Source: Mytilus edulis (taxonomy: Eukaryota). Taken from it: a stretch of DNA of 64,000 nucleotides. Position 1 is the first letter of the stretch. The number at the start of each line of letters is the position of its first letter. The stretch spans positions 26,660,001 to 26,724,000 of the forward strand of contig NC_092357.1 in assembly GCF_963676685.1 (NCBI RefSeq), written 5' to 3'. The notes under the pieces are model-generated. The model did no database searches and was not told the DNA's origin. It was given only the letters and a program-made list of their open reading frames with translations. Of the stretch, positions 2,477 to 55,975 are shown in pieces. The position numbers and the translations under genes were made by a program.

Positions 2477-4841
2477 TTTAAATTACAAGCCTGTTACCTT
2501 TAATAACTACAACGAATTAAAACAAATACCTTAAATTAATTGAGGAAAGTATCAAAAAACAGCATAATATCATAACGAACTATGCGCAACAAGAATGCAT
2601 TTTTGAGGGTACAACTTCTATACGAGAATCGTCTTTTTGCATCGTCTATTGAAAGTCCAATACTGTATACATGATTTAGAACCCTTGTAAGAATTTTGCC
2701 AGGATCTCGAGTATGTAACCTATTTTGAATCAAAATTTTAGCACCTTTTCAACGTAAATACATAAATGGATTTCATTTTAGAATATCATAACTTTAACAT
2801 GTTCATAACTTGGAATATCTATTACCTGTCGTTTTTTTTAATCAGTTGAAGGTCGTATGTTGCATAATTATCTTTCAGTCTGGTGGATGTTCATTTGTAA
2901 TCACAAACCAATGTAATTTTAATTGTTTACTTTTTGACTGACAAAGATAAATTGTCTAATAAATACCAACCAACAGCTAACAACATGAACATACAATCAT
3001 TGAACTATACATACTTTCAAGTAAATAGAGTAAGCATTTTATTTTTTATTTTAATCAGAAATATGATTTGTCTATTTCCCTGCCGAAAAGATCAAGATCA
3101 TTTTCACTAAGGAGTATATTAACTGGAAGCGTAGGCGATAAATGATTAAGACCATGTACAATGCAATTCATTAAGTTACGGCTGAACAAGCTACATCAAA
3201 TTACATTTTATCTCGGAGGAAATATTACCGTTTTTTTCATACTTGTGATAATCGGATTTCTTGCGGGGATGAATGATCGTGGTCTATCCCTTGCATTAGT
3301 ATGGAAACTTCGAGAGGTATGAGACAAGTTGTACAACTTCTTATAAGCGTTATTAATATATAATACGCGTAAAATGTAGGAAAACGTTTCGTCTTATCTT
3401 TTTGCGATAATATCAGATATTAAACTTTATTTTGAAAGATCAGTAACGTAAAACTTCAAGAGGTATTCCTGATTGAATGCTGATGCAGTTATCTCTTATC
3501 TAAACCACCTGTCATGAATTATTCAGCAGATCACTTTGATTTGTTGAAAATAAAAATATTATAAAAATTTAGTTAAAAATATCACAAGTCTTGTCTATAA
3601 ATTATATAAAACAAAGTAAAATCTTAAAATTGTCCCTGTTGGAATCTATGTCAATGTATGTAGAGGTTCTTGATTATGGAATGATGTCCTTGATTAATCT
3701 ATATGTAAATAAAGAACTACAAAACCTACTTTACTACCGCTAATTGTCTATGTATAACATGTATGTATACTGCAAAGGAACATGGTACCTTATTTAGATC
3801 GTATGTAAACATGAACAAGTCTGACCAGGCAAATACGATTTTCTATCAATTTTACTGAAACGTTGTTAATGCTTTCAATTGTACACAAAGAGTGTTGTTA
3901 GACCAAAAACACGAACATTCACATTTACAAACGAACAAGCAAAAACATAAATGTTAGGGTCAACCGCATCTGTATTGGTTTCGTGTTAAAGGTCAAAATC
4001 TGTAATTGTTAGAATTTCTTGATGTTTCCGAAATGTTAAAGATTATTGAAGATATTTTCTGTAAAGCACGCACCAACTTATTGTTTTGTGATAGCGTACT
4101 AACGTGTTAGATAGAATTTGAAAGGATTGGAAAATTATTATAGAGTCCATCCTAATTCTGGTCAAGGATGTTCTTGTAAAAATCTGTACATTCAAATATG
4201 CCAAATATTGACACAGTTGCAATTGTCATCAATCTTTAGATAATAACAATTTTTACCAGTTAAAAAATTTAAAAAATCACTAGCAATTTATTTCCACTCT
4301 TACATGTCTTAGACTAAAAACTTGACTTGAAATACTGTTTTGAGATTGACGGACCTTTATTTAAAAAAATATCAACAGCGGTTAGGTGAAAAACTCAACA
4401 TTTTCACATATAAAGAGTAACCTACTTCTTTGTAAATATTCAACTTTATCTTTTTGAAAATGTCATCTATAATGATTGTTCTAGTTTTAATAAAAAAAAA
4501 AATTCTCAAAAAATATACAATGTTATCGTCTTCTTTACGTATTTCTTCTCAGTTTTATAAAGTCGTCATGAACATCATCTGATATATCTTGATTCTTGTC
4601 TCAGCCGATATGCAATAAGTTACATAATCTGGGCTCATTGATGTATAAAAGTGCAACGCAACTGTTACTTTAATATACGAAGACTTGATAATTATCGGAA
4701 ACAAGAACATTAATGTATACATTACGATTCATCAGAGGTTTAAACTTCTGTGCTTCTAATTACAATTGTTTCTACATTACATAATTGTTTTTGCAAATTT
4801 GTTTCTTTTTCATTTATAGGCTCACTTGAATCAAGGAATGA

Positions 4842-4928: not shown

Positions 4929-7900
4929 GTAATCCATTATATTTATATTTGAGCAAGTAATTGTTAGCCTCATGCAACTAATACAATAAGTCATAATTTT
5001 CATTCATCATAGTCTGTAATTCAGCGGTTTTCATTTGTAACTGTTTAAAGACCAAACAGCCTATTGTTTATGCGCATCAGCTAACGCAACTTGGTAGTGA
5101 CATAAAAGCTCTATGACGTTGTTTCTAGCAATGAAAAAACGTCAAATTATAACGTCCAATTTCGCGTTTTTCACGGATTCTAACATGGTGTACGCTACGT
5201 ACAAAATGTAGGTACGCTACGTCTCCCAAGAAAAGAGGAACTATTATGCGTCGCGCTACTTTAACATCCTGTGTGTACCGGTAAGGTAAAAGGTTTTTTT
5301 TGCCCGATTTATGGGCATTATGTTTTCTGGTCTGTGCGTCCGTTCGTTCGTCCGTCCGTCTGTCCCGCTTCAGGTTAAAGTTTTTGGTTGCAGTTTTTTG
5401 TCAAGGTAGTTTTTGACGAAGTTGAAGTCATATCAACTTAAAACTTAGTAAACATGTTCCTTATGCAATGATCCTTTTAATTTTAGTGTCAATTTTTCAA
5501 AAATTAAAAAAAATGAGTATTCACAAGGTTAGGCCCATAATCAAATATTCCTAAAAGTTTTGACATACTGGCAACATGTGCATGTAACTGATGTCTGGAT
5601 GATTCTCGTAAAATAATATCCGATCTTGCAATGAAGTTAAAATTTATTTATACTGCTTATTTGACAAAATCTTATAGTAAAAATAAAATAAAATGATAAC
5701 AAAGGGTCATTTTTGTTTGTCATTTGTTTCATTTCAAATTGTCTTAAGGAGAAATGATAAACATATTGTCTAATCTCACTGAAGATTACAGCTAATTTTC
5801 TAATGTATGTAGATCAACACTTTGGTTTCCTGCTTGCTTTGTTTGTATATTCTGTATAATTATATTTTGATAACGTCCAATTCAATTAAATAGCATGTAT
5901 ACAGGTTTACATACCTATATATAAAGATGTCAATCTTAATAACAGAGCTTGAGTAAACATTTATTAAGGAAGCCAACCAAAGTTTCACCCTACATGCACT
6001 AGGAATTTAGCTGTAAGGCAAAAAGTATTAATAAAACTAATACTCAGCGAATGTGAATGTGAATTAAAATCAAAATTTTCGGTGTTTAAAACTAAATTGT
6101 TGTAAGTTTAACTTATGACAAAAACAATTGCTCCAAGAATAATATCTTAAATAAAATCGCTCCCTTTCATTTAGCTACAACTGTGACCGGAAAGATTGAA
6201 AACAAATTTCGATTTTCAATGCCGGCAACAACCTTTTCTTTGTTTTAATTTCCAAAATGAGCAATTCAGATTTATTATATTTTATCCTGTTGGAGAAATC
6301 TTACTTTGTAGTTTTCAACGGAAAATTATTTCTAAATTAATTTTTGAATCAAAAACTTTTTGTAATTTATATTTACTGTCTCGTTTATTGAAAATACATG
6401 AGGTAGTAATAAAAGGATTGTATTTTAAGATAGATGTATAACGTTTTGGAATCAAAAATGTCATTCATATATTATACCTATAATTTTTATTTCCTAATAT
6501 CTTAATTATTCTAAAATAATAAATTCACAAACTCGATGCAATAATTTCTAAACGTTCGTCCTAGGTCGGCAAAAATAATGGTAAAAAGAACTCCGTCCAT
6601 GCTATTGGATGTCCGTCTTTCAACAGTACCGAATGAGTTCGTTACGGCAATCTTCTGAAATTGACGCGAAAAAGAAACAAGCACATCTAGTCTGGTATAG
6701 TCAAATACTCTGTAAGTTAACCAGTGCCATCTTTCATTTCTTTTTTTATTTTCAATCATTTTGCTTATGTAGGACAGAGGACAAAGACATGCTTTCCTAA
6801 CAAATTAAGCGGCGTGAAAGGTTATTTTAAACAATTTTCCATTCCGACGGATGGTGTTTCTGAAGGTTAATATTGTGCGGCAACATCGTAAGATCTGATA
6901 CTGACACATGCATTTAATCTCTTGTATTACCGGATAATAAAGTAGGTGAATATAGTTGTCATTCTTGGAAATTTAAATGTAGGTTTTAAACGTCCAATTA
7001 ATTGCGATTTTTTTTCTTCAAATAGTGCGCCAGCAAGGAAAGTTTGTACTATGACGTCAGATGCAATGTTCTGAAGAAAGACAACTCTTTACTTCAAAAT
7101 GAACGAGAAAAAAACATGAAAATTACTTATAACTTTTTTGAAAGGTCGGTGACATACGCTTTTTATTGCTTTATTTTGAAGAGTACACATGGCACTTTCC
7201 TTCTTGAAATTATTATGAAGAAATCACTGGTAGATATTTTTTAATACTGGAAACGTTTTTCATTTTTACGTTTTATTTTTGGCGGGAATGAAATAAATCA
7301 TATTTTTAAAGATCAAAACAATACGAGTCTAAAACTCTTGAACCTGTATTTGATAGATACAAATCTACTGTTTAACGTGAAACAAGAATTATGCTTGTAG
7401 GCTTGATATAAAGTATTTTTTGGAGAGTTTATATAACAAGCACATATTATGTTAATATTCGGGAAAACACGAAACTGAGGTTGCTATAGCGACAAAACTA
7501 AGTCGGTGACCCCCGATTTTTTTCATCATATTTTGTTCCTCAAATCATGAAATACCTTCACACAAAATTTTAAGGAAAAAATCACTGGTAGAAATGAATA
7601 GGCTGTTTGGTCTTTAATATATTTTTTCGTTCACATTTTTGTACATTATTTAGACCGTTAATATCCTTGTTTGAATTGATTTATATATTTCATTCAGGCG
7701 CCTTTTAAAGCTGGAAATGCGGTTTGGCTTTGATCATCGTTAAACTTCGTACGGTGAATTAAACATGCTAGACTTGTAAAATACTGTGTCATTTGATCTA
7801 TTGTGAAGAGTTGTCCAATTGGCAATCTTACCGCGTCTTTTTTTATATTTCCAGTTATTCATAGCAATATATTTGTTAAGCCTGTATATTGGATACTTAT

Positions 7901-16900: not shown

Positions 16901-17896
16901 TATGCAGCGTTTTTCAAATTTACAAATTAAATAAAAAATGTTAGCAGTTGTTTTAGATAAGATTGCATGCTAACCTTGGGAATAGGGAAGCGCAAAAAAA
17001 GACAGAAGTGTTTTAAAAACATGTGATCATTCATTACAGATAATGGTTCTGATACAAATGTGAGAAATAGAAGCATTTCAAAGGCAAAGATCAGGACCAT
17101 CAAACTGTTATGCGTTGTTGTGTGTGGTAAGAATGATACTGCTTCAGTATACTCTTTTAATTACATACTGCATAGATCTAGGTGGCAACTCATAAACTAA
17201 TAAAGAAGGTACATCATTTATATCCATTGCAATACTGAGTGTCGCCTAAAAATTATGTATGTTGATGACTGAAGTATTGATAACGGAAGTGTCCGTTTTG
17301 AGAAGTGGTTATCTAAAGTATGATTACCATGATGTCTCTCATAAACATACAGATTGTTTTAAGTATTCATGTTTTTGTTTCAAAAATTTACATCATTAGA
17401 GTTTTTCTTTTCAGATTTTTTCGTACAATAGTCACGATATATTGAAATATTATTGTTATTTAAGAACATGTGATTTATACTTAATGGGACACAAACCATC
17501 TATCTTTTGCAACCAATCTTAATATTAACCAACCATATGTTATCCTGAGCGTTATTCATATCTTTTACAATTTTGCAAATGGTACTGGTTACTATAAAAG
17601 GGTAATGCCTATATCATGCATATGTTAATGAACAACATCTACTTGAATACAAGTTCAATTAATAATGATACTAAATCACACATATATGTTTTACAGCATA
17701 CGTTGTTTGCTGGGCTCCAATTACAATAGGACCTGTTTTAATGCACCATGAAATAGCAGAATATGGGCTTTGGTTTCAGATTCTTTATTTATTTGCTCCA
17801 GTAAACAGCCTGGGTAATCCTTTAGTGTTTCTAATTTTCAACCAGAAGATGTTTCGTTCTAAGACGATAAAGACCAAGAAAAGAGTATTAAGGTAG
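4842..17896 (+). CDS. Spliced class A (rhodopsin-like) neuropeptide-type GPCR, CCAP/NPS/vasopressin-receptor-like; join(4842..4928,8867..8996,13295..13620,16027..16162,17040..17126,17697..17896), 321 aa
   Basis: All five introns are GT-AG and phases match (0,1,0,1,1); 966 nt including TAG. Translation gives an N-terminus with NMT/NRS sequons, TM1, KSRMRFFVTNLAIADLCVG (TM2), SLDRA (TM3), TM4 Trp, ECL2 Cys, TM5 LP..I..CY, ISKAKIRTIKL + CWAP (TM6) and APVNSLGNPLVF (TM7). Family assignment is from remembered motifs. Confidence 0.9.
5049..7613. mobile_element. Non-autonomous Kolobok-type DNA transposon in GPCR intron 1
   Basis: Perfect 17-bp TIR agaccaaacagcctatt (5049-5065) / aataggctgtttggtct (7597-7613); TTAA on both sides (5045-5048, 7614-7617); RR..YY termini; no intact ORF. 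Confidence 0.8.
5295..5490 (+). mobile_element. Helentron/DINE-1-like (HINE) 5' fragment
   Basis: T-run + gccc start followed by a cgtccgttcgttcgtccgtccgtctgtcc microsatellite, typical of HINE left ends; boundaries approximate. Confidence 0.5.
8050..8278 (+). repeat. Short interspersed hairpin-containing element, copy 1
   Basis: gtgcacactgaataacccgcggtgcgggttatt ... agccaatcagaagacgtgttacatc; a reverse-complement homolog lies at about 15600-15870. Confidence 0.6.
8867..8996 (+). CDS. GPCR exon 2 (TM1-ICL1-start of TM2)
   Basis: ttacag|GGT ... GCAG|gtaag; GLKWISLVILLGIILFNLLVVVLLILRNSKSRMRFFVTNLAIA. Confidence 0.9.
9304..9664 (+). repeat. About 355-bp retrozyme-like repeat monomer with degenerate hammerhead motifs
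   Basis: Unit bounded by a direct ataact repeat. It contains gtca-CTGGTGA-gtcttatggagac-gcaa (9591-9630). Partial copies of the same family lie at about 22790-22995 and 2430-2510. Confidence 0.6.
10080..10828 (+). mobile_element. Decayed 3' end of a non-LTR retrotransposon ORF2
   Basis: Frameshifted remnants KFCKQV, W..SVK.LL, LRTY and the C-terminal motif TLEVERGRYRN.P..QR...C..IEDEQHF..LCDRYSVLR. Confidence 0.7.
10831..11135 (+). pseudogene. Diverged duplicate of the 3' part of GPCR exon 3 plus the start of intron 3
   Basis: Encodes YGIYSEDDVSCWPDAPRL versus FGTYSEEVVTCWHDAPRL at 13567-13620. The donor GTAAG is changed to GGAAG. Downstream sequence aligns with 13621-13875 and, after a repeat, 11582-11700 aligns with 13880-13990. 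Confidence 0.8.
11143..11580 (-). repeat. Abundant interspersed SINE-like repeat
   Basis: aagaagatgtggtatgattgc..gagacaact..ccac..aagaccaaaatgacacaga..ggctcctgacttgggacaggc; related copies near 7700-7845, 14260-14450, 14920-15300, 18960-19070 and 37020-37560. Confidence 0.65.
11765..12066 (+). repeat. Second copy of the LINE 3'-end fragment (duplicate of about 10520-10830)
   Basis: aagcatttatcaaggacaca...cactagaagtcgaacgaggacgctataga...caacaaatgtata is near-identical to 10528-10830. Confidence 0.85.
12227..12990. repeat. Repeat element with internal, roughly 30-bp palindromic tandem units
   Basis: Units like cctgttcacaggtctagtctggtcaagtagac repeat at 12636-12830; inverted aagcagtcct / aggactgctt near the ends. 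Confidence 0.5.
13295..13620 (+). CDS. GPCR exon 3 (TM2-TM4, ECL2)
   Basis: Polypyrimidine tract + tcag|AT completes the LAIAD Asp; DLCVGVFFVLPE...SLDRAYVVVKPL...AWVIG...CWHDAPRL|gtaag. Confidence 0.92.
15600..15870 (-). repeat. Short interspersed hairpin-containing element, copy 2 (inverted relative to 8050-8278)
   Basis: gatgtaacgcgttttctgattggct ... ggtgcacactgtcaaataacccgctacgcgcgttattcagcgtgcacc. Confidence 0.6.
16027..16162 (+). CDS. GPCR exon 4 (TM5-ICL3)
   Basis: ttgtag|GTG ... AAAG|gtaaat; VFLYSDLTTIIILPIVIITVCYIVIIFTIRGRERHG. Confidence 0.88.
17040..17126 (+). CDS. GPCR exon 5 (ICL3-TM6)
   Basis: ttacag|AT ... TGTG|gtaag; NRSISKAKIRTIKLLCVVVC. Confidence 0.88.
17697..17896 (+). 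CDS. GPCR exon 6 (TM6-TM7-short C-tail)
   Basis: ttacag|CA; AYVVCWAPITIG...LFAPVNSLGNPLVFLIFNQKMF...KKRVLR-TAG. Confidence 0.88.
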
Positions 17897-19201
17897 AGAA
17901 GGACACTGAAGACCAAAAAAATCTAGCCAATGAACTTTCTTAAATTTCCCATATATTGTTCATTGGGGTGTACCTAACAAAATATCAAAATTTGAGAATA
18001 GGTTTCCAGGCTATTTTTAGAAATATTCTTTGAAAAAGTTACCTCCCTTTGCAGTCCTAAAAATGTCATTTTTTGGCCTGTTTAAGCTATAAAGGTACCT
18101 GCCAAAACAGGCATATATAATTTTTTTTTAACTTTTTCTCAGAACATTATGATAAATGAATATTTTGAAATATTTTAGACAGAATTTTTTTTTTTTTTTT
18201 TTTTTTCAAAATGGCTTCCCTTTTTTGCAATATGCCTGTAACCGGTTTGTGTACAATTTTGCCAAAAAAATATTGTAAAAGTAAAAAAAAAAAAAATTGT
18301 GTCAATGAACTTTTTTTTAAATTTGTATATAAAATACTTTATATCCATGCTACAAGTTATAAAAAAATAAAGATATGCTTCCAGGGAAAATAAAAAGTTA
18401 CGGGGGTAGAATGACACCCTGTCACACACCCTTTTATGCAGATTTCATGAAAAATGTTAAAATTTTCACTATTTTTTTTAAATATCGTAACTTAAGGTGG
18501 GATTGTTTCTTTAATGAGCATAGCTTTTGCAGCTTCCATGTCTTTGTAATACTTTTTTATCCTTTCATTTAACCTTCTTTATGCTGAGAGGAGGTTGCAT
18601 CAGTTTTGAATATTCAGGAAGTTGACAGTTGACCTATGAGCATAATCATCATTTTGATGGTTAATAATCCTTGATGAAAAAACTAATCTTTCATTAAATA
18701 AGTATTCATAACTATTCATCATACCTTGGTTTTTTTTTTCCTCATGTGAAAAGGATTGTCCTACTAATTTATATATATCATTACAGTGTATTATGTGTTT
18801 CGTGATGTTTTAATTTTAAATTGTATGATTTTGATGTTCTCATGCTCTTGTTTAGTAGTTTTGTTGAGTGGTCACTGCTTGGAAATACTAAGATCTTTTA
18901 ATTGACTGTTGATGTTTATTTTTTAAATACACCTAAACATATAGACTATTTTGTTTGGACTTTGCTCATTGTTGAAGGCCATACAGTGACTTATAGTTGT
19001 TAATTTCTGTGTCATTTTGGTCTCTCGTGGAGAGTTGACTCATTGGTAATCATACATCTTTCTTTTTTTATATGAATAGTGTAATGTTTGATCTGAATGA
19101 TTGCTGTGAAAGTCTTGGAAGTGTAAAAATCAACATACTCATAAATCACTGTTCATGATTTTAATGATGTAGAAAAAAAGAAAATATATATATATATATA
19201 T

Positions 19202-19361
19202 ATATAATTTAAAAGTAAAAAACACAAAAAATCACATCATAAATCGAACATTGTTTCTGTTAGCGCTTTCACCGCATCTCCAGCGGTTCATCAGACAGAA
19301 TTGTTATATGAATGTTCGATTTATGATGTGATTTTTTGTGTTTTTTACTTTTAAATTATAT
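19202..19361. repeat. Perfect 51-bp inverted repeat enclosing the hammerhead, lying between (TA)n tracts
   Basis: 19202-19252 atataatttaaaag...aaatcgaacatt is the reverse complement of 19311-19361; (TA)n at about 19184-19205 and 19393-19414. Confidence 0.9.
19255..19300 (-). ncRNA. Minimal type I hammerhead ribozyme with intact catalytic core
   Basis: Minus strand reads UUCUGU-CUGAUGA-ACCGC uggagau GCGGU-GAAA-GCGC-UA^-ACAGAA: 6-bp stem I, 5-bp stem II, palindromic AGCGCU stem III and a CUA cleavage triplet. Confidence 0.85.
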
Positions 19362-21078
19362 TTTCTGTACCAAGGACTTTTTATTTATCAAAATATATAT
19401 ATATATATATATATGCAAAATAAATTTTATTTCACATCATATTTTTTAATGTAATTGCAGACATTTTACAGACAACAATTGATTTTTATCTAGATGGACC
19501 ATGTTTCAATAATATAAAACAAACCACTGTATTAATTATCAAAATATTATGATAATATAACATCAATTTCCAATACATATCCAGGATGAGAATGTGGATG
19601 ACACTTGTAAAAAAGTATACTCTCAAAAACAAAAAATAAATATGGAGCAGATTCAGTTTCCAAGGGACTCACTAGAACGTTTGTCCAATTTCATGAAAAC
19701 TGCATTCTCTGAAAATATATTTGTGAGTGACTTGGTCCAGTTTATTAACCAATAAATTCCTCTAAAAAAGCGTTTAATCCTTATTCTTTAATTTTGGCCA
19801 AAAATAATAATTTTCCACACTCGTTATCACCATCATAGCATAATACATGTAGTATATTTGTGTCATTGAATTGGCCAGGCACATGAATTTATTTGTTGGT
19901 TCACACAAAAATATGTACTCCTTGTTACTAAAAGTCTTATTATGATCATCAAAGGAATTTTTTGTGTTTGTATTCAATTTAAAGATTAACGCCATGTGCA
20001 AATAAATAGTTTTAACATTGAGTCAGATTGTGTTACATGTAATATCGCCTCATTGATTACAAAAAGAAGACTTAGTTTGGTCAACGTCCTCTATCGAGAA
20101 ATAAACAACTTCATGAACAACTACTGGAGGTCCTCTCGACCAATTATATAAAAGTATTCTCTAATATGCAAATCATATAAGAAGTATGATAATATAATAT
20201 CAATTTACAATACATATATATATCCATGTCAATGAGAATGTGGATTAAACTTGCAAAGGTGTTTAGTCTCAAAAATAAATATGGGGCAGATTCAGTTTCC
20301 AAGGGACTCACTGAAACGTTTGTCCAATTTCATGAAAACTGCAATCTTTAAAAAACATATTCATTAAAACTTCATATAAAACAATTGTTTTGCCCTAAGA
20401 TCGGAATGCTACAACACATCTTTTAAAAAAATGTGGAAAAAGGGTGCGGTGGTAATGGGGCAAGATGGTAAAGCATTGGAACTGATACATTACAATATTG
20501 TTACTTTTATACAACCTTATGAGTCCCCCTCATGTCTGATTTATGGCCTAGCCTAATGCTTATTATGTTGGTTTATGTAGATAAATTAAAGTTATCTCCC
20601 CTTTATTAAGATTCAGTTGACTTATATTGTTACAATAGCACCTACTTTTGTATAAAAGTTCATAATAATCTGTTGAAAAATTTGTCAATCAAAATAAAAA
20701 TCTATATGAGAAATAATCCTTCAGGCTTCAGGAAGTTATCCACCAATATTGACGAAAATGGAAAATATTTATTCAGTAAAATACTATACTTGTTGTGTAT
20801 CAATTTTTTTCACTCTGTCGAGGCAAACTTGATTTACAGACAGAGAAATTATTAAACGATGCTGCAATTTTATAACAAATCCCTAATTCTTATATATATT
20901 TTAAGTGTAAGTACTCTTTGGTTACTCAAAATTTAGTAAAAACTTCAATTTATTCATTATCGACTATTATCAAGGATTGTTTCAAAGGATTAGATTTTTA
21001 GATAGGCATAACCAGTTTTTCTACAGAATTATAGCATATAAATATGAAATTTTCTCAGTCTTTAACCACATTTACAGT

Positions 21079-22345
21079 CTATTCCTCTTTTTCAGAAAAA
21101 AACTTCTTGAACACATTTGCCGTTTTCCCTTTCAAACCATGTTCCTGCATGATGGATTTTACGCCATCGTCATTGTTTCTTTTGTAAGCAAGTTCCAGGT
21201 GATGAAGGCTGAGACCTGTACAGGAAAGTTTCCTTGCAGTGTCTTTAGAAATAACCTTTTTAACAATGACACCAGAAAAACCCTCTACAATTGACAAATA
21301 ATTAAATGGAAATAAATCCTTTCCAGAACATGTCTGTTTCAGCTTCAGATGGAACAGTTTGTATAAACTTCTAACATCCTCCTCAGAATTATGAGCATCA
21401 TAAACAATCTCCAGAAACTTTTGAACTAATGTTTGCTGCTTATAATTTTGAACATCAGCTTTTGGTATTTCACGTTTTGCAATTTTCAAAGTGTCAATGC
21501 ATCCATAAATTAGGTTATCAAAAGAACTCAGCAGATTAAACTCGCGCAACAAATTTCTCAGTACAGGGACATCATATGAATGGATGTTATGACCAACAAG
21601 AACAGGACGAGATTTTTTCTGTATCATTTCAATTAGTTGAAGTAAGGCTGTTCTTATACAAACACTTTCAACTGGAACACCATGGCAATACATTTGGTTT
21701 CTCTCAAAAGAGAAAGTAATACCGGTAACATCACTGGCCTTTGATGAAATAGATTGTCGTGGAGACACATAATGATTTAGCATGTTCATCCCATCATATG
21801 CTGATATTTGTGTTATATCAGAGGTTCTTGATAACCCAGTTGTTTCTAAATCAAACACAACATAATTGTCTATGCCTTCCAAAGAATATTTAGTTGGAAT
21901 TGTTTCAATTCTTGAACTGAATTTTAATGTGCGTATTGTTATTGTTTTACTTTTCTACATTGGCTAGAGGTATAGGGGGAGGGTTGAGATCTCATAAACA
22001 TGTTTAACCCCGCCGCAATTTTGCGCCTGTCCCAAGTCAGGAGCCTCTGGCCTTTGTTAGTCTTGTATGATTTTAAATTTTAGTTTCTTGTGTATAATTC
22101 GGAGTTTAGTATGACGTCCATTATCACTGTACCATTATGCATATTTTAGGGGCCAGCTGAAGGACACCTACGGGTGCGGGAATTCTCGCTACATTGAAGA
22201 CCCATTGGTTGCCTTCGGCTGTTGTTTGCTCTATGGTCGGGTGGTTGTCGCTTTGACATATTCACCATTTCCTTTCTCAATTTTATTTCAATGTCTCTTA
22301 CCGACACATTTTCTTCAATTTGTGGTTGATATGTTTCTCCTTCTA
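21079..22345 (-). pseudogene. DEDDh 3'-5' exonuclease (DnaQ/TREX1/PML-exonuclease-like), probably transposon-borne, interrupted by a retroposon
   Basis: ORF 21079-21882 has FDLETTG (ExoI), GHNIHSYD (ExoII), CIDTL and AHNSEED (ExoIII), plus a helical C-terminal region. The frame continues upstream as EGETYQPQIEENVSVRDIETIP once the insertion at 21910-22292 is removed. Confidence 0.8.
21910..22285 (+). mobile_element. Truncated retroposon/SINE-like insertion with 7-bp target-site duplication
   Basis: tttcaat at 21903-21909 and 22286-22292; same family as 45629-45989, 55035-55537 and 55597-55975 (ends ...tctcaattttat). Confidence 0.85.
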
Positions 22346-22918: not shown

Positions 22919-22962
22919 GCGTCACTGGTGAGTCTTATGTAGACGAAACGCGCGTCCGGCGT
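22919..22962 (+). ncRNA. Degenerate minimal hammerhead ribozyme motif
   Basis: gcgtca-CTGGTGA-gtc ttatgta gac-GAAA-cgcgc-GTC-cggcgt; CUGAUGA is changed to CUGGUGA. Confidence 0.7.
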
Positions 22963-55034: not shown

Positions 55035-55975
55035 CTTTCAATCAGTTTGATTGAGGTCTGGAGCTGGCATGTCAGTTAACTGCTAGTAGTCTGTTATTAT
55101 TTATGTATTATTGTCATTTTATTTATTTTCTTTTGTTACATCTTTTGACATCGGACTCGGACTTCTCTTGAACGGAATTTAAATGTGCGTATTGTTATGC
55201 GTTTATTTTTCTACATTGGGTAGAGGTATAGGGGGAGGGTTGGGATCTCATAAACATGTTAAACATCGCCGCAATTTTGCGCCTGTCCCAAGTCATAAGC
55301 CTCTGGCCTTTGTTCGTCTTGTATAATTTTAGTTTCTTGTGCATAATTCGGAGTTTAGTATGACGTCCATTATCACTGTACTAGTATACATATTTTTAGG
55401 GACCAGCTGAAGGACACCTACGGGTGCGGGAATTCTCGCTACATTGAAGACCCATTGGTGGCCTTCGGCTGTTGTCTGCTCTATGGTAGGGTTGTTGTCG
55501 CTGTGACACATTGCCCATTTCCTTTCTCAATTTTATTGTATATACATGTTACTTCGAATTTAAGATACTAATTGAAAATGCATAAGTTGTACATTAAATA
55601 AAATTGAGAATGGAAATGGGTATTGTGTCAAAGAGACAAAAACCCGACCATAGAGCAGATAACAACCGAAGGCAATCAAAGGGTCTTCAATGCAGTGAAA
55701 AACTCCCGCACTAGGAGGAGTCCTTCATCTGGCCCCCAAAGAGATATGTTACTAGTTCAGTGATAATGAACGTCATAGAAAACTCCAAATTATACACAAG
55801 AAACTAAAATTAAGAATCATATAAGACTAGCAAAAGCCAGAGGCTCCTGACTTTGGACAGGTGCACAAATGCGGTGGGGTTAAACATATTATTTGATATC
55901 TCAACCCTTCCCCTATATGACTTGCCAATGTAGAAAATACGAACTCACATCAGTACGCATAGTAAAACTCCGTTT
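55035..55975. repeat. Two tail-to-tail copies of the retroposon-like repeat (55035-55537 +, 55597-55975 -)
   Basis: ...cctttctcaattttatt, a spacer of about 60 bp, then aataaaattgagaatggaaatggg...; the arms are homologous but diverged. Confidence 0.85.

What the first reader, a model, noticed from the sequence alone, without database searches (positions are those of the whole stretch)
19184..19414. Intact hammerhead ribozyme in the loop of a perfect 51-bp hairpin, between TA microsatellites
Seen: the 58-nt spacer of a perfect inverted repeat (19202-19252 / 19311-19361) is almost entirely a minus-strand type I hammerhead. It has unmutated CUGAUGA and GAAA boxes, paired stems I and II, and a palindromic AGCGCU stem III; predicted cleavage is between 19261 and 19260. 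Known: minimal hammerheads with palindromic stem III occur in Penelope-like element termini and retrozymes and can act as dimers, and Penelope insertions often carry inverted terminal segments. Inference: either a very short, young Penelope-type insertion targeted to (TA)n, or a 160-bp ribozyme-carrying mini-element. Its sequence differs from the other hammerhead family in this window, and it lies antisense about 1.3 kb downstream of the GPCR stop.
Basis: partly seen in the sequence, partly recalled or inferred. Interest (0 to 1): 0.8.

Follow-up and report, generated by a model that had tools for sequence, protein, structure and literature searches.

The report
Truncated double Penelope-like retroelement insertion
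The hairpin with a hammerhead ribozyme in its loop is the scar of a failed insertion of a young Penelope-like retrotransposon into a (TA)n microsatellite: two truncated copies of the element's 3' end joined head-to-head, a layout already described for these elements.

Summary
There is a perfect 51-nt inverted repeat (19202-19252 / 19311-19361). Its 58-nt spacer holds a minus-strand minimal type I hammerhead with an unmutated core, cutting between 19261 and 19260, and (TA)n lies on both sides.

It is not a 160-bp mini-element. The unit runs from 19202 to 19392 and consists of two 5'-truncated copies of the 3' end of one young retrotransposon, joined head-to-head. [quoted passage not shown]

- **Left copy:** antisense, 106 nt, contains the hammerhead, lacks the 31-nt "tail".
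- **Right copy:** sense, 82 nt, begins 8 nt after the ribozyme cut site and carries the tail.

I examined 61 insertions of this family. All lie in (TA)n. Forty-three are head-to-head pairs with locus-specific junctions, and every pair has exactly one tailed end. Published work already describes inverted truncated copies, a one-sided tail, (TA)n preference and priming from both target strands.

One point may be new. Copy 5' ends cluster at the ribozyme cut site, a possible footprint of self-cleavage in vivo. The scan has noted similar head-to-head Penelope-like insertions elsewhere in this genome.

The parts
19184..19201 (.). Left part of the target (TA)n microsatellite. The boundary with the element is ambiguous by about 4 nt, because the element's tail-less 3' end itself reads ...TTATAT.
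   Evidence: Sequence. Every insertion of the family examined is flanked by (TA)n.
19202..19307 (-). Copy A: an antisense, 5'-truncated, tail-less copy of the 3' end of the Penelope-like element. It corresponds to reference L040 positions 7001-7106 and contains the whole hammerhead.
   Evidence: BLAST to L040 gives 100% identity over 106 nt. The same 106 nt occur at 100% identity in at least 40 other places.
19255..19300 (-). Minimal type I hammerhead. Stem I is 19300-19295 with 19260-19255. CUGAUGA is 19294-19288. Stem II with its loop is 19287-19271. GAAA is 19270-19267. The palindrome AGCGCU (helix III, formed only in a dimer) is 19267-19262. The predicted cut is between 19261 and 19260.
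   Evidence: A covariance model built from the motif finds 149 matches in the genome, from 91.6 down to about 26 bits. One stem II pair changes from C-G to U-A in 7 diverged copies.
19308..19310 (.). Three filler bases (ATG) at the head-to-head junction. They match neither copy.
   Evidence: Long copies continue ...ATTGTTATCGTTAAT here. Junctions differ from locus to locus.
19311..19361 (+). Copy B, first part: a sense, 5'-truncated copy (reference 7056-7106). It starts 8 nt downstream of the hammerhead cut site and forms the right arm of the hairpin.
   Evidence: BLAST to L040 gives 100% identity over 82 nt including the tail.
19362..19392 (+). Copy B, second part: the 31-nt tail (reference 7107-7137), present at this end only.
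   Evidence: The same 31 nt follow the arm at exactly one end of all 43 two-copy insertions. A 30-40-bp tail at one end is described for Penelope-like elements (PMC8557442).
19393..19414 (.). Right part of the target (TA)n microsatellite.
   Evidence: Sequence.

Best explanation
Window 19202-19392 is a dead-on-arrival insertion of a young Neptune-like Penelope-like retroelement (PLE) into a (TA)n microsatellite.

**Shown**
- The unit is two 5'-truncated copies of the element's 3' end, with their 3' ends facing outward.
- Copy A (antisense, 106 nt) stops 7 nt upstream of hammerhead stem I and ends at the tail-less 3' end.
- Copy B (sense, 82 nt) starts 8 nt after the ribozyme cut site and ends with the 31-nt tail.
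- The 51 nt that both copies share form the perfect hairpin. The extra 55 nt of copy A, plus three filler bases, form the loop, and that is the only reason the hammerhead sits there.

**Inferred origin**
- The element's GIY-YIG endonuclease cut both strands of the (TA)n target.
- Each free 3' end primed reverse transcription of element RNA. One started at the outer start site (after the tail) and one at the inner start site (before it).
- Both cDNAs stopped early, in or next to the hammerhead.
- They were joined by a template jump that added three bases.

The locus encodes nothing and has no second hammerhead in cis, so I predict no function for it. The hammerhead is the family's normal 3'-UTR ribozyme and is intact only because the insertion is recent.
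For: **Parent element**
[quoted passage not shown] These are the marks of the Neptune and Nematis clades in PMC8557442.
- On the sense strand the order is ORF, hammerhead, 59 nt, 31-nt tail, (TA)n.

**Census of 61 loci**
- 43 loci are head-to-head pairs and 18 are single copies.
- All 43 pairs have exactly one tailed end. The chance of this if the ends were independent is about 7e-14.
- Junction positions differ from locus to locus.

**Independence of similar loci**
- L002 and L004 have the same general layout but different flanks and junctions.

**Literature**
- Inverted 5'-truncated copies, a one-sided 30-40-bp tail, hammerheads in the repeats and (TA)n bias are described in PMC8557442.
- A purified PLE protein cleaves and extends both target strands and starts reverse transcription at two adjacent internal sites that delimit the tail (PMC11167929).
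- Dual minimal hammerheads 100-700 bp apart on opposite strands, and solitary ones, were attributed to truncated PLEs (PMC4209133).
Against: - Priming from both target strands is inferred from the layout and from in-vitro work on a different PLE (Anolis Poseidon). It has not been observed for this family.
- That study saw no difference in start site between the two strands, whereas this family shows a strict one-of-each rule.
- No tandem pseudo-LTR was found in the longest copy, so the classical PLE tandem layout is not seen here.
- The RT was assigned with the general Pfam RVT_1 model and the domain combination. It was not placed in a PLE phylogeny.
- Seven of the 43 pairs have symmetric junctions. 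These would fit a snap-back of a single cDNA as well as twin priming.
Confidence: 0.9

Rival explanations
1. The 160-190-bp hairpin plus ribozyme is a non-autonomous mini-element that is copied as a unit, comparable to a retrozyme or a SINE that borrows the PLE machinery.
For: Three loci (the window, L002, L004) have a similar overall size and layout. The region downstream of the hammerhead cut is the minimal template for PLE insertion in vitro in another PLE.
Against: The three loci have different junctions: ATG filler, CGTC, and a join inside stem II. The window's junction occurs only once in the genome. Arm lengths across the 43 pairs range from 11 nt to over 2 kb, as expected for independent truncations. 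There is no tandem direct repeat of the kind that defines retrozymes.
Confidence: 0.03
2. It is a fold-back or MITE-type DNA transposon with terminal inverted repeats that happens to carry a hammerhead.
For: It has a perfect inverted repeat and AT-rich flanks. Pairs of 100%-identical inverted matches 250-2500 bp apart look like terminal inverted repeats at first sight.
Against: The 'repeat' length differs at every locus (49 to 804 nt). The two ends are not equivalent, since one always carries a 31-nt tail. The internal sequence is always the collinear 3' part of an RT-endonuclease ORF on one or both strands. No transposase gene is present.
Confidence: 0.02
3. The locus has been taken over by the host as a structured RNA gene: a long hairpin RNA or small-RNA source, or a regulated self-cleaving 3'-flank element lying between the GPCR-like exon and the exonuclease gene.
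For: If transcribed, either strand folds into a 51-bp perfect stem (-90.8 kcal/mol with flanks, z = -13.7). The only Rfam hits are long-hairpin miRNA models far below threshold.
Against: Both copies are 100% identical to the active family, so there has been no time for selection. The same layout arises at 43 loci as an insertion by-product. The four raw-read RNA runs laid on the family gave 23 reads in all, none of them locus-specific. A single minimal hammerhead with a two-base helix III loop is not expected to cleave as a monomer (PMC4209133).
Confidence: 0.03
4. The palindrome is an assembly artefact, a chimeric fold-back read.
For: PLE tandem and inverted structures are reported to cause assembly problems (PMC8557442).
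Against: Unique, non-palindromic flanks lie on both sides. The ends are asymmetric (tail on one side only) and there are three filler bases. Forty-two other loci on 14 chromosome-scale sequences follow the same rule.
Confidence: 0.02

Closest known systems
Neptune-clade (C-terminal endonuclease) Penelope-like elements, as described by Arkhipova 2006 and Craig et al. 2021 (PMC8557442)
   Same: A single ORF with RT plus C-terminal GIY-YIG, a CX2-5CxxC linker and internal cysteines. The hammerhead sits in the terminal region. Copies show heavy 5' truncation, adjacent inverted truncated copies, a 30-40-bp tail at one end, and insertion into (TA)n.
   Different: No tandem pseudo-LTR was seen in the longest copy. 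The clade was assigned from motifs only, not from a tree, so Nematis is not formally excluded.
Poseidon PLE of Anolis carolinensis (PAc), characterised in vitro by Frangieh et al. 2024 (PMC11167929)
   Same: Both target strands are cut and extended. Two adjacent reverse-transcription start sites delimit the tail. The start sites lie about 85-92 nt downstream of the hammerhead cut in PAc, and 59 and 90 nt downstream here. The RNA just downstream of the cut is sufficient as a template.
   Different: PAc belongs to a different clade and has no linker zinc finger. Its start sites showed no strand preference and no homology to the target. Here every pair uses one of each start site, and both sites abut AU repeats that could pair with a (TA)n target. 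That last point is my inference.
Minimal PLE hammerheads (Cervera and de la Pena 2014, PMC4209133)
   Same: Type I topology, an intact CUGAUGA / GAAA / UH core, and a two-pair helix III with a palindromic loop that implies action as a dimer. They occur singly or as two copies on opposite strands 100-700 bp apart.
   Different: Stem II is 5 bp here, against 7-8 bp in many of those. The pair next to the core is A-U, not the usual G-C. There is no bulged base between A9 and stem II.
Non-LTR retrozymes of metazoans, including mussels (Cervera and de la Pena 2020, PMC7229834; Li et al. 2026 preprint, 10.64898/2026.07.22.740005)
   Same: They have a type I hammerhead with a short palindromic helix III, and are proposed to derive from PLE repeats.
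   Different: Retrozymes are tandem direct repeats that give circular RNAs. This locus has one hammerhead, no direct repeat, and an inverted layout.
Twin priming of human L1 (inversion/deletion insertions).
   Same: Both ends of a staggered break prime cDNA synthesis, and the two cDNAs are joined at microhomology or with filler bases.
   Different: In L1 the second primer anneals internally, so the result is an inversion of a single copy. Here both primers start near the RNA's 3' end, so the result is an inverted duplication.

Membership tests
Penelope-like element (endonuclease-positive, C-terminal type) | Reverse transcriptase and GIY-YIG endonuclease in one ORF, with the endonuclease C-terminal | tested here: met
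   In the 770-aa ORF of L041, RVT_1 covers residues 257-446 (32.8 bits, cutoff 29.6) and GIY-YIG covers 683-767 (27.2 bits, cutoff 22.6). The window copy is 100% identical to the 3' end of such copies.
Penelope-like element (endonuclease-positive, C-terminal type) | RT belongs to the PLE/telomerase-related clade | not tested
   No phylogeny was run. A PDB sequence search gave no informative hit.
Penelope-like element (endonuclease-positive, C-terminal type) | Insertions are 5'-truncated, often with an adjacent inverted truncated copy, and carry a 30-40-bp tail at one end only | tested here: met
   Of 61 loci, 43 are head-to-head pairs. All 43 have exactly one 31-nt tail.
Penelope-like element (endonuclease-positive, C-terminal type) | Partial tandem copies forming pseudo-LTRs | tested here: not met
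   There is no direct repeat of 30 nt or more in the 8.1-kb locus of the longest copy, L040. No tandem pair was seen among the loci sampled. This layout is frequent in PLEs but is not obligatory.
Neptune clade of PLEs | CX2-5CxxC zinc-finger-like linker upstream of GIY-YIG, plus the CCHH motif inside the endonuclease core | tested here: met
   The ORF reads ...KCGDPRCGTCEML... and then ...VIYCATCPTCNKNYIGQT...H...H. The criterion comes from PMC8557442. Nematis shares a reduced form of the linker, so the clade call is tentative.
Neptune clade of PLEs | Insertion bias for (TA)n | tested here: met
   All the insertions inspected abut (TA)n on their outer sides.
Hammerhead ribozyme, type I, minimal PLE form | Conserved core: CUGANGA, GAAA, and a cleavage triplet N-U-H | tested here: met
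   CUGAUGA, GAAA and C-U-A are present, with the cut 3' of A at 19261.
Hammerhead ribozyme, type I, minimal PLE form | Helices I and II formed, with open ends on helix I | tested here: met
   Stem I has 6 bp and stem II has 5 bp in the MFE fold. In 41 related copies 87.5% of cells are paired, against 31-54% when the partner columns are slid. One pair shows a C-G to U-A change in 7 copies. Covariation support is weak.
Hammerhead ribozyme, type I, minimal PLE form | Score above the curated threshold of an Rfam hammerhead model | tested here: not met
   There was no hit at gathering score. The best hit is Hammerhead_3 at 14.9 bits against 48.5. This is expected for minimal helix III variants, which were originally found with a dedicated descriptor (PMC4209133).
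Hammerhead ribozyme, type I, minimal PLE form | Self-cleavage | not testable with these tools
   The RNA runs gave 23 reads on the family and no read ends at the cut site. The only support is indirect: copy 5' ends cluster at the cut site.
Non-LTR retrozyme | Tandem direct repeats, each with a hammerhead, giving unit-length circular RNA | tested here: not met
   There is one hammerhead, an inverted rather than direct layout, and no tandem repeat.
MITE / fold-back DNA transposon | Terminal inverted repeats of fixed length, equivalent ends, and a target-site duplication | tested here: not met
   Arm length varies from locus to locus and the ends are not equivalent, since the tail is on one side only. 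A target-site duplication cannot be read within (TA)n.

The most novel reading that the evidence does not exclude
The pile-up of copy 5' ends and internal-deletion boundaries at the hammerhead cut site (reference 7047|7048) is a genomic footprint of self-cleavage in vivo. On this reading, the roughly 90-nt 3' cleavage product (ACAGAAAC + 51 nt + tail) is itself a sufficient template for target-primed reverse transcription, and it accounts for many of the mini-insertions, including the window's right arm. Together with the strict rule of one tailed and one tail-less end, it would also suggest that a single RNA bridges both (TA)n ends through two AU-repeat start sites. This would be the first in-vivo evidence of what the PLE hammerhead does to transposition templates.
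Probability: 0.3. Interest if true: 0.55.

Novelty: new member of a known kind. Interest (0 to 1): 0.3.

Why it matters
The locus itself is ordinary. It shows that a striking "ribozyme in a perfect hairpin" can be a by-product of how Penelope-like elements integrate, and it should not be annotated as an RNA gene or as a new element class.

The family behind it is more useful. It is very young, with copies 99-100% identical, and low in copy number (about 70 loci), so insertion junctions can be read to the base.

Two regularities bear on open questions about PLE transposition:
- **The one-tail rule.** Every two-sided insertion has exactly one tailed end. This constrains models of how the two reverse-transcription start sites seen in vitro are used in vivo.
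- **The cut-site cluster.** Truncation points cluster at the hammerhead cut site. This offers a way to ask whether PLE hammerheads cleave in vivo, for which RNA-seq evidence was reported as lacking (PMC11167929).

Tried and rejected
- **Rfam, whole window.** Nothing at gathering thresholds. With E-value thresholds, only a weak Hammerhead_3 hit and long-hairpin miRNA models that merely reflect the 51-bp stem.
- **DNA transposon with terminal inverted repeats.** This was my first impression from the 100%-identical inverted matches. I rejected it once the repeats proved to differ in length at each locus and to flank an RT-endonuclease ORF.
- **RNA evidence.** Four raw-read RNA runs of a related organism gave only 9, 9, 5 and 0 reads at 95-99% identity, with no ends at the cut site. 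This tests neither expression nor cleavage.
- **Covariation in the hammerhead.** Copies of the young family are almost identical. Forty older relatives found with a covariance model mostly show neutral decay. There is one compensatory pair in 7 copies, and 29 of 500 shuffles do as well. This is weak.
- **Do both arms of a pair come from the same RNA?** Two locus-private substitutions are shared by both arms (L056, L062), but the arms of L032 differ by a 26-nt repeat unit. Inconclusive.
- **Tail versus stem I pairing.** The tail start UUUCUGU could pair with ACAGAA in place of stem I. It does so in the MFE fold, but the fold is no better than shuffled sequence.
- **PDB sequence search with the ORF.** Nothing informative.
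- **What I did not do.** I only describe where the ORF of the longest copy is broken.
Full report
**1. The observation**

A repeat search finds arms 19202-19252 and 19311-19361, each 51 nt and 100% complementary, with 58 nt between them.

Read on the minus strand, the spacer contains:
- UUCUGU (19300-19295)
- CUGAUGA (19294-19288)
- a 5-bp stem II with a 7-nt loop (19287-19271)
- GAAA (19270-19267)
- GCGCUA (19266-19261)
- ACAGAA (19260-19255)

The cleavage site 3' of A17 therefore falls between 19261 and 19260. The minimum-free-energy fold of the spacer forms stems I and II. AGCGCU leaves only two base pairs and a two-base loop for helix III, so an active fold needs a second molecule. This is what is described for metazoan and Penelope-type hammerheads (PMC4209133).

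No Rfam model reaches its threshold. That is a limit of the models for this minimal variant, not evidence against the motif.

**2.

Searching the window's own genome (1.37 Gb, 14 chromosome-scale sequences) with the 160-bp unit gave only one full-length 100% match, the window itself. It also gave at least 40 places that match positions 1-106 at 100%, many of them as convergent pairs 250-2500 bp apart.

- Long members carry a perfect inverted repeat of up to 470 nt or more around an ORF.
- One end of each pair carries an extra 31 nt (TTTCTGTACC...ATCAAA) before the flanking (TA)n. The other end does not.
- In the window the same 31 nt follow the right arm, at 19362-19392.

**3. The parent element**

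[quoted passage not shown] That combination defines endonuclease-positive Penelope-like elements (PLEs).

[quoted passage not shown] Craig et al. list these as marks of the Neptune and Nematis clades, and suggest the linker guides insertion into (TA)n (PMC8557442).
- The longest copy is L040, about 3.7 kb between two (TA)n runs. Its ORF is broken by one frame change and one stop, and it has no direct pseudo-LTR.
- On the sense strand the order is: ORF stop, about 120 nt, hammerhead (reference 7008-7053, cut 7047|7048), 59 nt to the tail-less end (7106), 31-nt tail (7107-7137), (TA)n.

**4. What the window locus is**

Against that reference:
- 19202-19307 is an antisense copy of 7001-7106.
- 19311-19392 is a sense copy of 7056-7137.
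- Both are 100% identical to the reference, and three unmatched bases (ATG) lie between them.

The perfect hairpin is simply the 51 nt that two head-to-head, 5'-truncated copies have in common. The hammerhead is in the loop because the longer copy happens to stop 7 nt upstream of it, and the shorter one starts 8 nt downstream of its cut site.

**5. Census**

A 31-mer from the arm occurs 111 times in the genome and 0 times in the reversed control. I read 61 distinct insertion loci, holding 104 copies.

- All the insertions inspected lie in (TA)n.
- 43 loci are head-to-head pairs and 18 are single copies.
- Junction positions differ from locus to locus. Shared arm lengths run from 42 to 804 nt, and a few partner copies are as short as 11-16 nt of the tail.
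- The two loci most like the window (L002, L004) have unrelated flanks and different junctions. The 160-bp layout therefore arose independently and is not a mobile unit.
- In all 43 pairs exactly one end carries the tail. Among singles, 8 are tailed and 10 are tail-less. If the ends were independent, the chance of 43 out of 43 is about 7e-14.

**6. Mechanism**

Published descriptions match this closely.
- PLE insertions are heavily 5'-truncated. [quoted passage not shown]
- A purified PLE protein cuts and extends both strands of the target. It starts reverse transcription at two adjacent internal sites, and the interval between them is the tail (PMC11167929).

From this I infer that both 3' ends of the cut (TA)n primed cDNA synthesis, one from each start site. 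Both cDNAs aborted early and were joined by a template jump with three added bases. This step is inference; no tool here can show it.

Both start sites in this family abut AU repeats: AUAU at 7103-7106, and the (UA)n that would follow the tail in a read-through transcript. Pairing with the (TA)n primer may therefore select them. That too is inference, and it differs from the non-homologous initiation reported for the Anolis element.

**7. A possible footprint of ribozyme cleavage**

Copy 5' ends are not spread evenly.
- 20 of 104 lie in 7040-7059.
- Among the 97 copies ascertained through the probe, 18 lie in 7044-7059, against 7, 7 and 8 in the next three 16-nt bins. This gives P = 6e-4, or 0.018 if each locus is counted once.
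- Two independent internal deletions (L052, L076) and one single copy (L068) begin at 7048, within 1-3 nt of microhomology. L063 ends at 7047.

There are two explanations:
- The templates had been cut by the hammerhead.
- The reverse transcriptase stalls at the base of stem I, which would fit the ends at 7055-7059, including the window's right copy at 7056.

The palindrome AGCGCU also gives microhomology for joining two cDNAs, which explains L042 and L054. The effect here is moderate in size, and I treat it as a lead.

**8. Is the hammerhead functional?**

- **Within the family:** the copies are almost identical, so they carry no information.
- **Older relatives:** a covariance model built from the motif finds 149 scored matches, from 91.6 bits downward. 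In 41 aligned relatives 87.5% of cells pair, against 31-54% when the partner columns are shifted. One stem II pair changes from C-G to U-A in 7 copies. The shuffle control is not impressive, with 29 of 500 shuffles doing as well.
- **RNA data:** uninformative. Four raw-read runs from a related organism gave 23 reads in all.

Activity rests on the intact core and on what is known for the class: low activity, as dimers or with protein help (PMC4209133, PMC11167929). The window locus has one hammerhead and no partner in cis, so I expect no cleavage from a transcript of this locus alone.

**9. Context**

The insertion lies between two converging features.
- On the + strand is a terminal-exon-like ORF ending at 17896, with an NSLGNPLVF motif that fits the seventh helix of a rhodopsin-type receptor. 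This is read from the sequence only.
- On the - strand is an exonuclease-like gene at 21079-21882.

Nothing suggests that the insertion affects either.

**10. Verdict**

- The locus is a new member of a known kind: an aborted, two-sided insertion of a young Neptune-like PLE.
- Interest is low for the locus. It is moderate for the family-level regularities, namely the strict one-tail rule and the junction cluster at the cut site.
- Earlier notes of this scan (s1-838803, s1-830507) describe head-to-head PLE insertions elsewhere in the same genome and call it a mussel (Mytilus). I did not verify the species.

Noticed in passing
window 22919-22962 (+): A sub-threshold Rfam Hammerhead_1 match (25.1 bits against a gathering score of 34). 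Its core reads CUGGUGA instead of CUGAUGA. No repeat surrounds it.
   Followed up: partly
window 55461-55675: An imperfect hairpin of about 215 nt that attracts only sub-threshold plant-miRNA models (best 70.5 bits against 195). It looks like a MITE-type inverted repeat.
   Followed up: no
window 21079-21882 (-): A 267-aa ORF with an RNase_T-type exonuclease domain and a PML C-terminal domain. It converges on the insertion from the right.
   Followed up: partly
window 17741-17896 (+): A 51-aa terminal ORF with NSLGNPLVF, resembling the seventh helix of a rhodopsin-type receptor. Pfam gave no hit on this fragment.
   Followed up: partly
L040 7048-7113 (and window 19362-19368): The tail begins UUUCUGU, the same letters as the 5' strand of hammerhead stem I. 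In the natural 3' end the MFE fold pairs ACAGAA with the tail rather than with stem I, which could switch the ribozyme off. The fold is no better than shuffled sequence.
   Followed up: partly
L040 6935-6960; L032, L037, L050: A 26-nt direct repeat unit just upstream of the hammerhead varies in number between copies. In L032 the two arms of one insertion differ by one unit.
   Followed up: partly
L040 3438-7137 (G000:C8): This is the longest copy of the family, about 3.7 kb between two (TA)n runs. It has a 348-aa N-terminal ORF part with no Pfam match. The ORF is broken by one frame change near 4600 and one stop at 5316.
   Followed up: partly
L070 3839-5703: About 1.86 kb of foreign sequence is inserted inside a copy of the element at reference 6791-6796.
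   Followed up: no
L066 1-110: A tRNA-like head (…GGTTCGAATCCC…) lies immediately left of a (TA)n run that received one of the insertions.
   Followed up: no
L040 3600-7137, public runs: Small runs of 36-284 million letters from three coded organisms hold 59-75% of the sampled words of the 3.5-kb element. That is more than low-coverage DNA would be expected to give, so the element may be transcribed in some samples. The run type is only a guess in the index.
   Followed up: no
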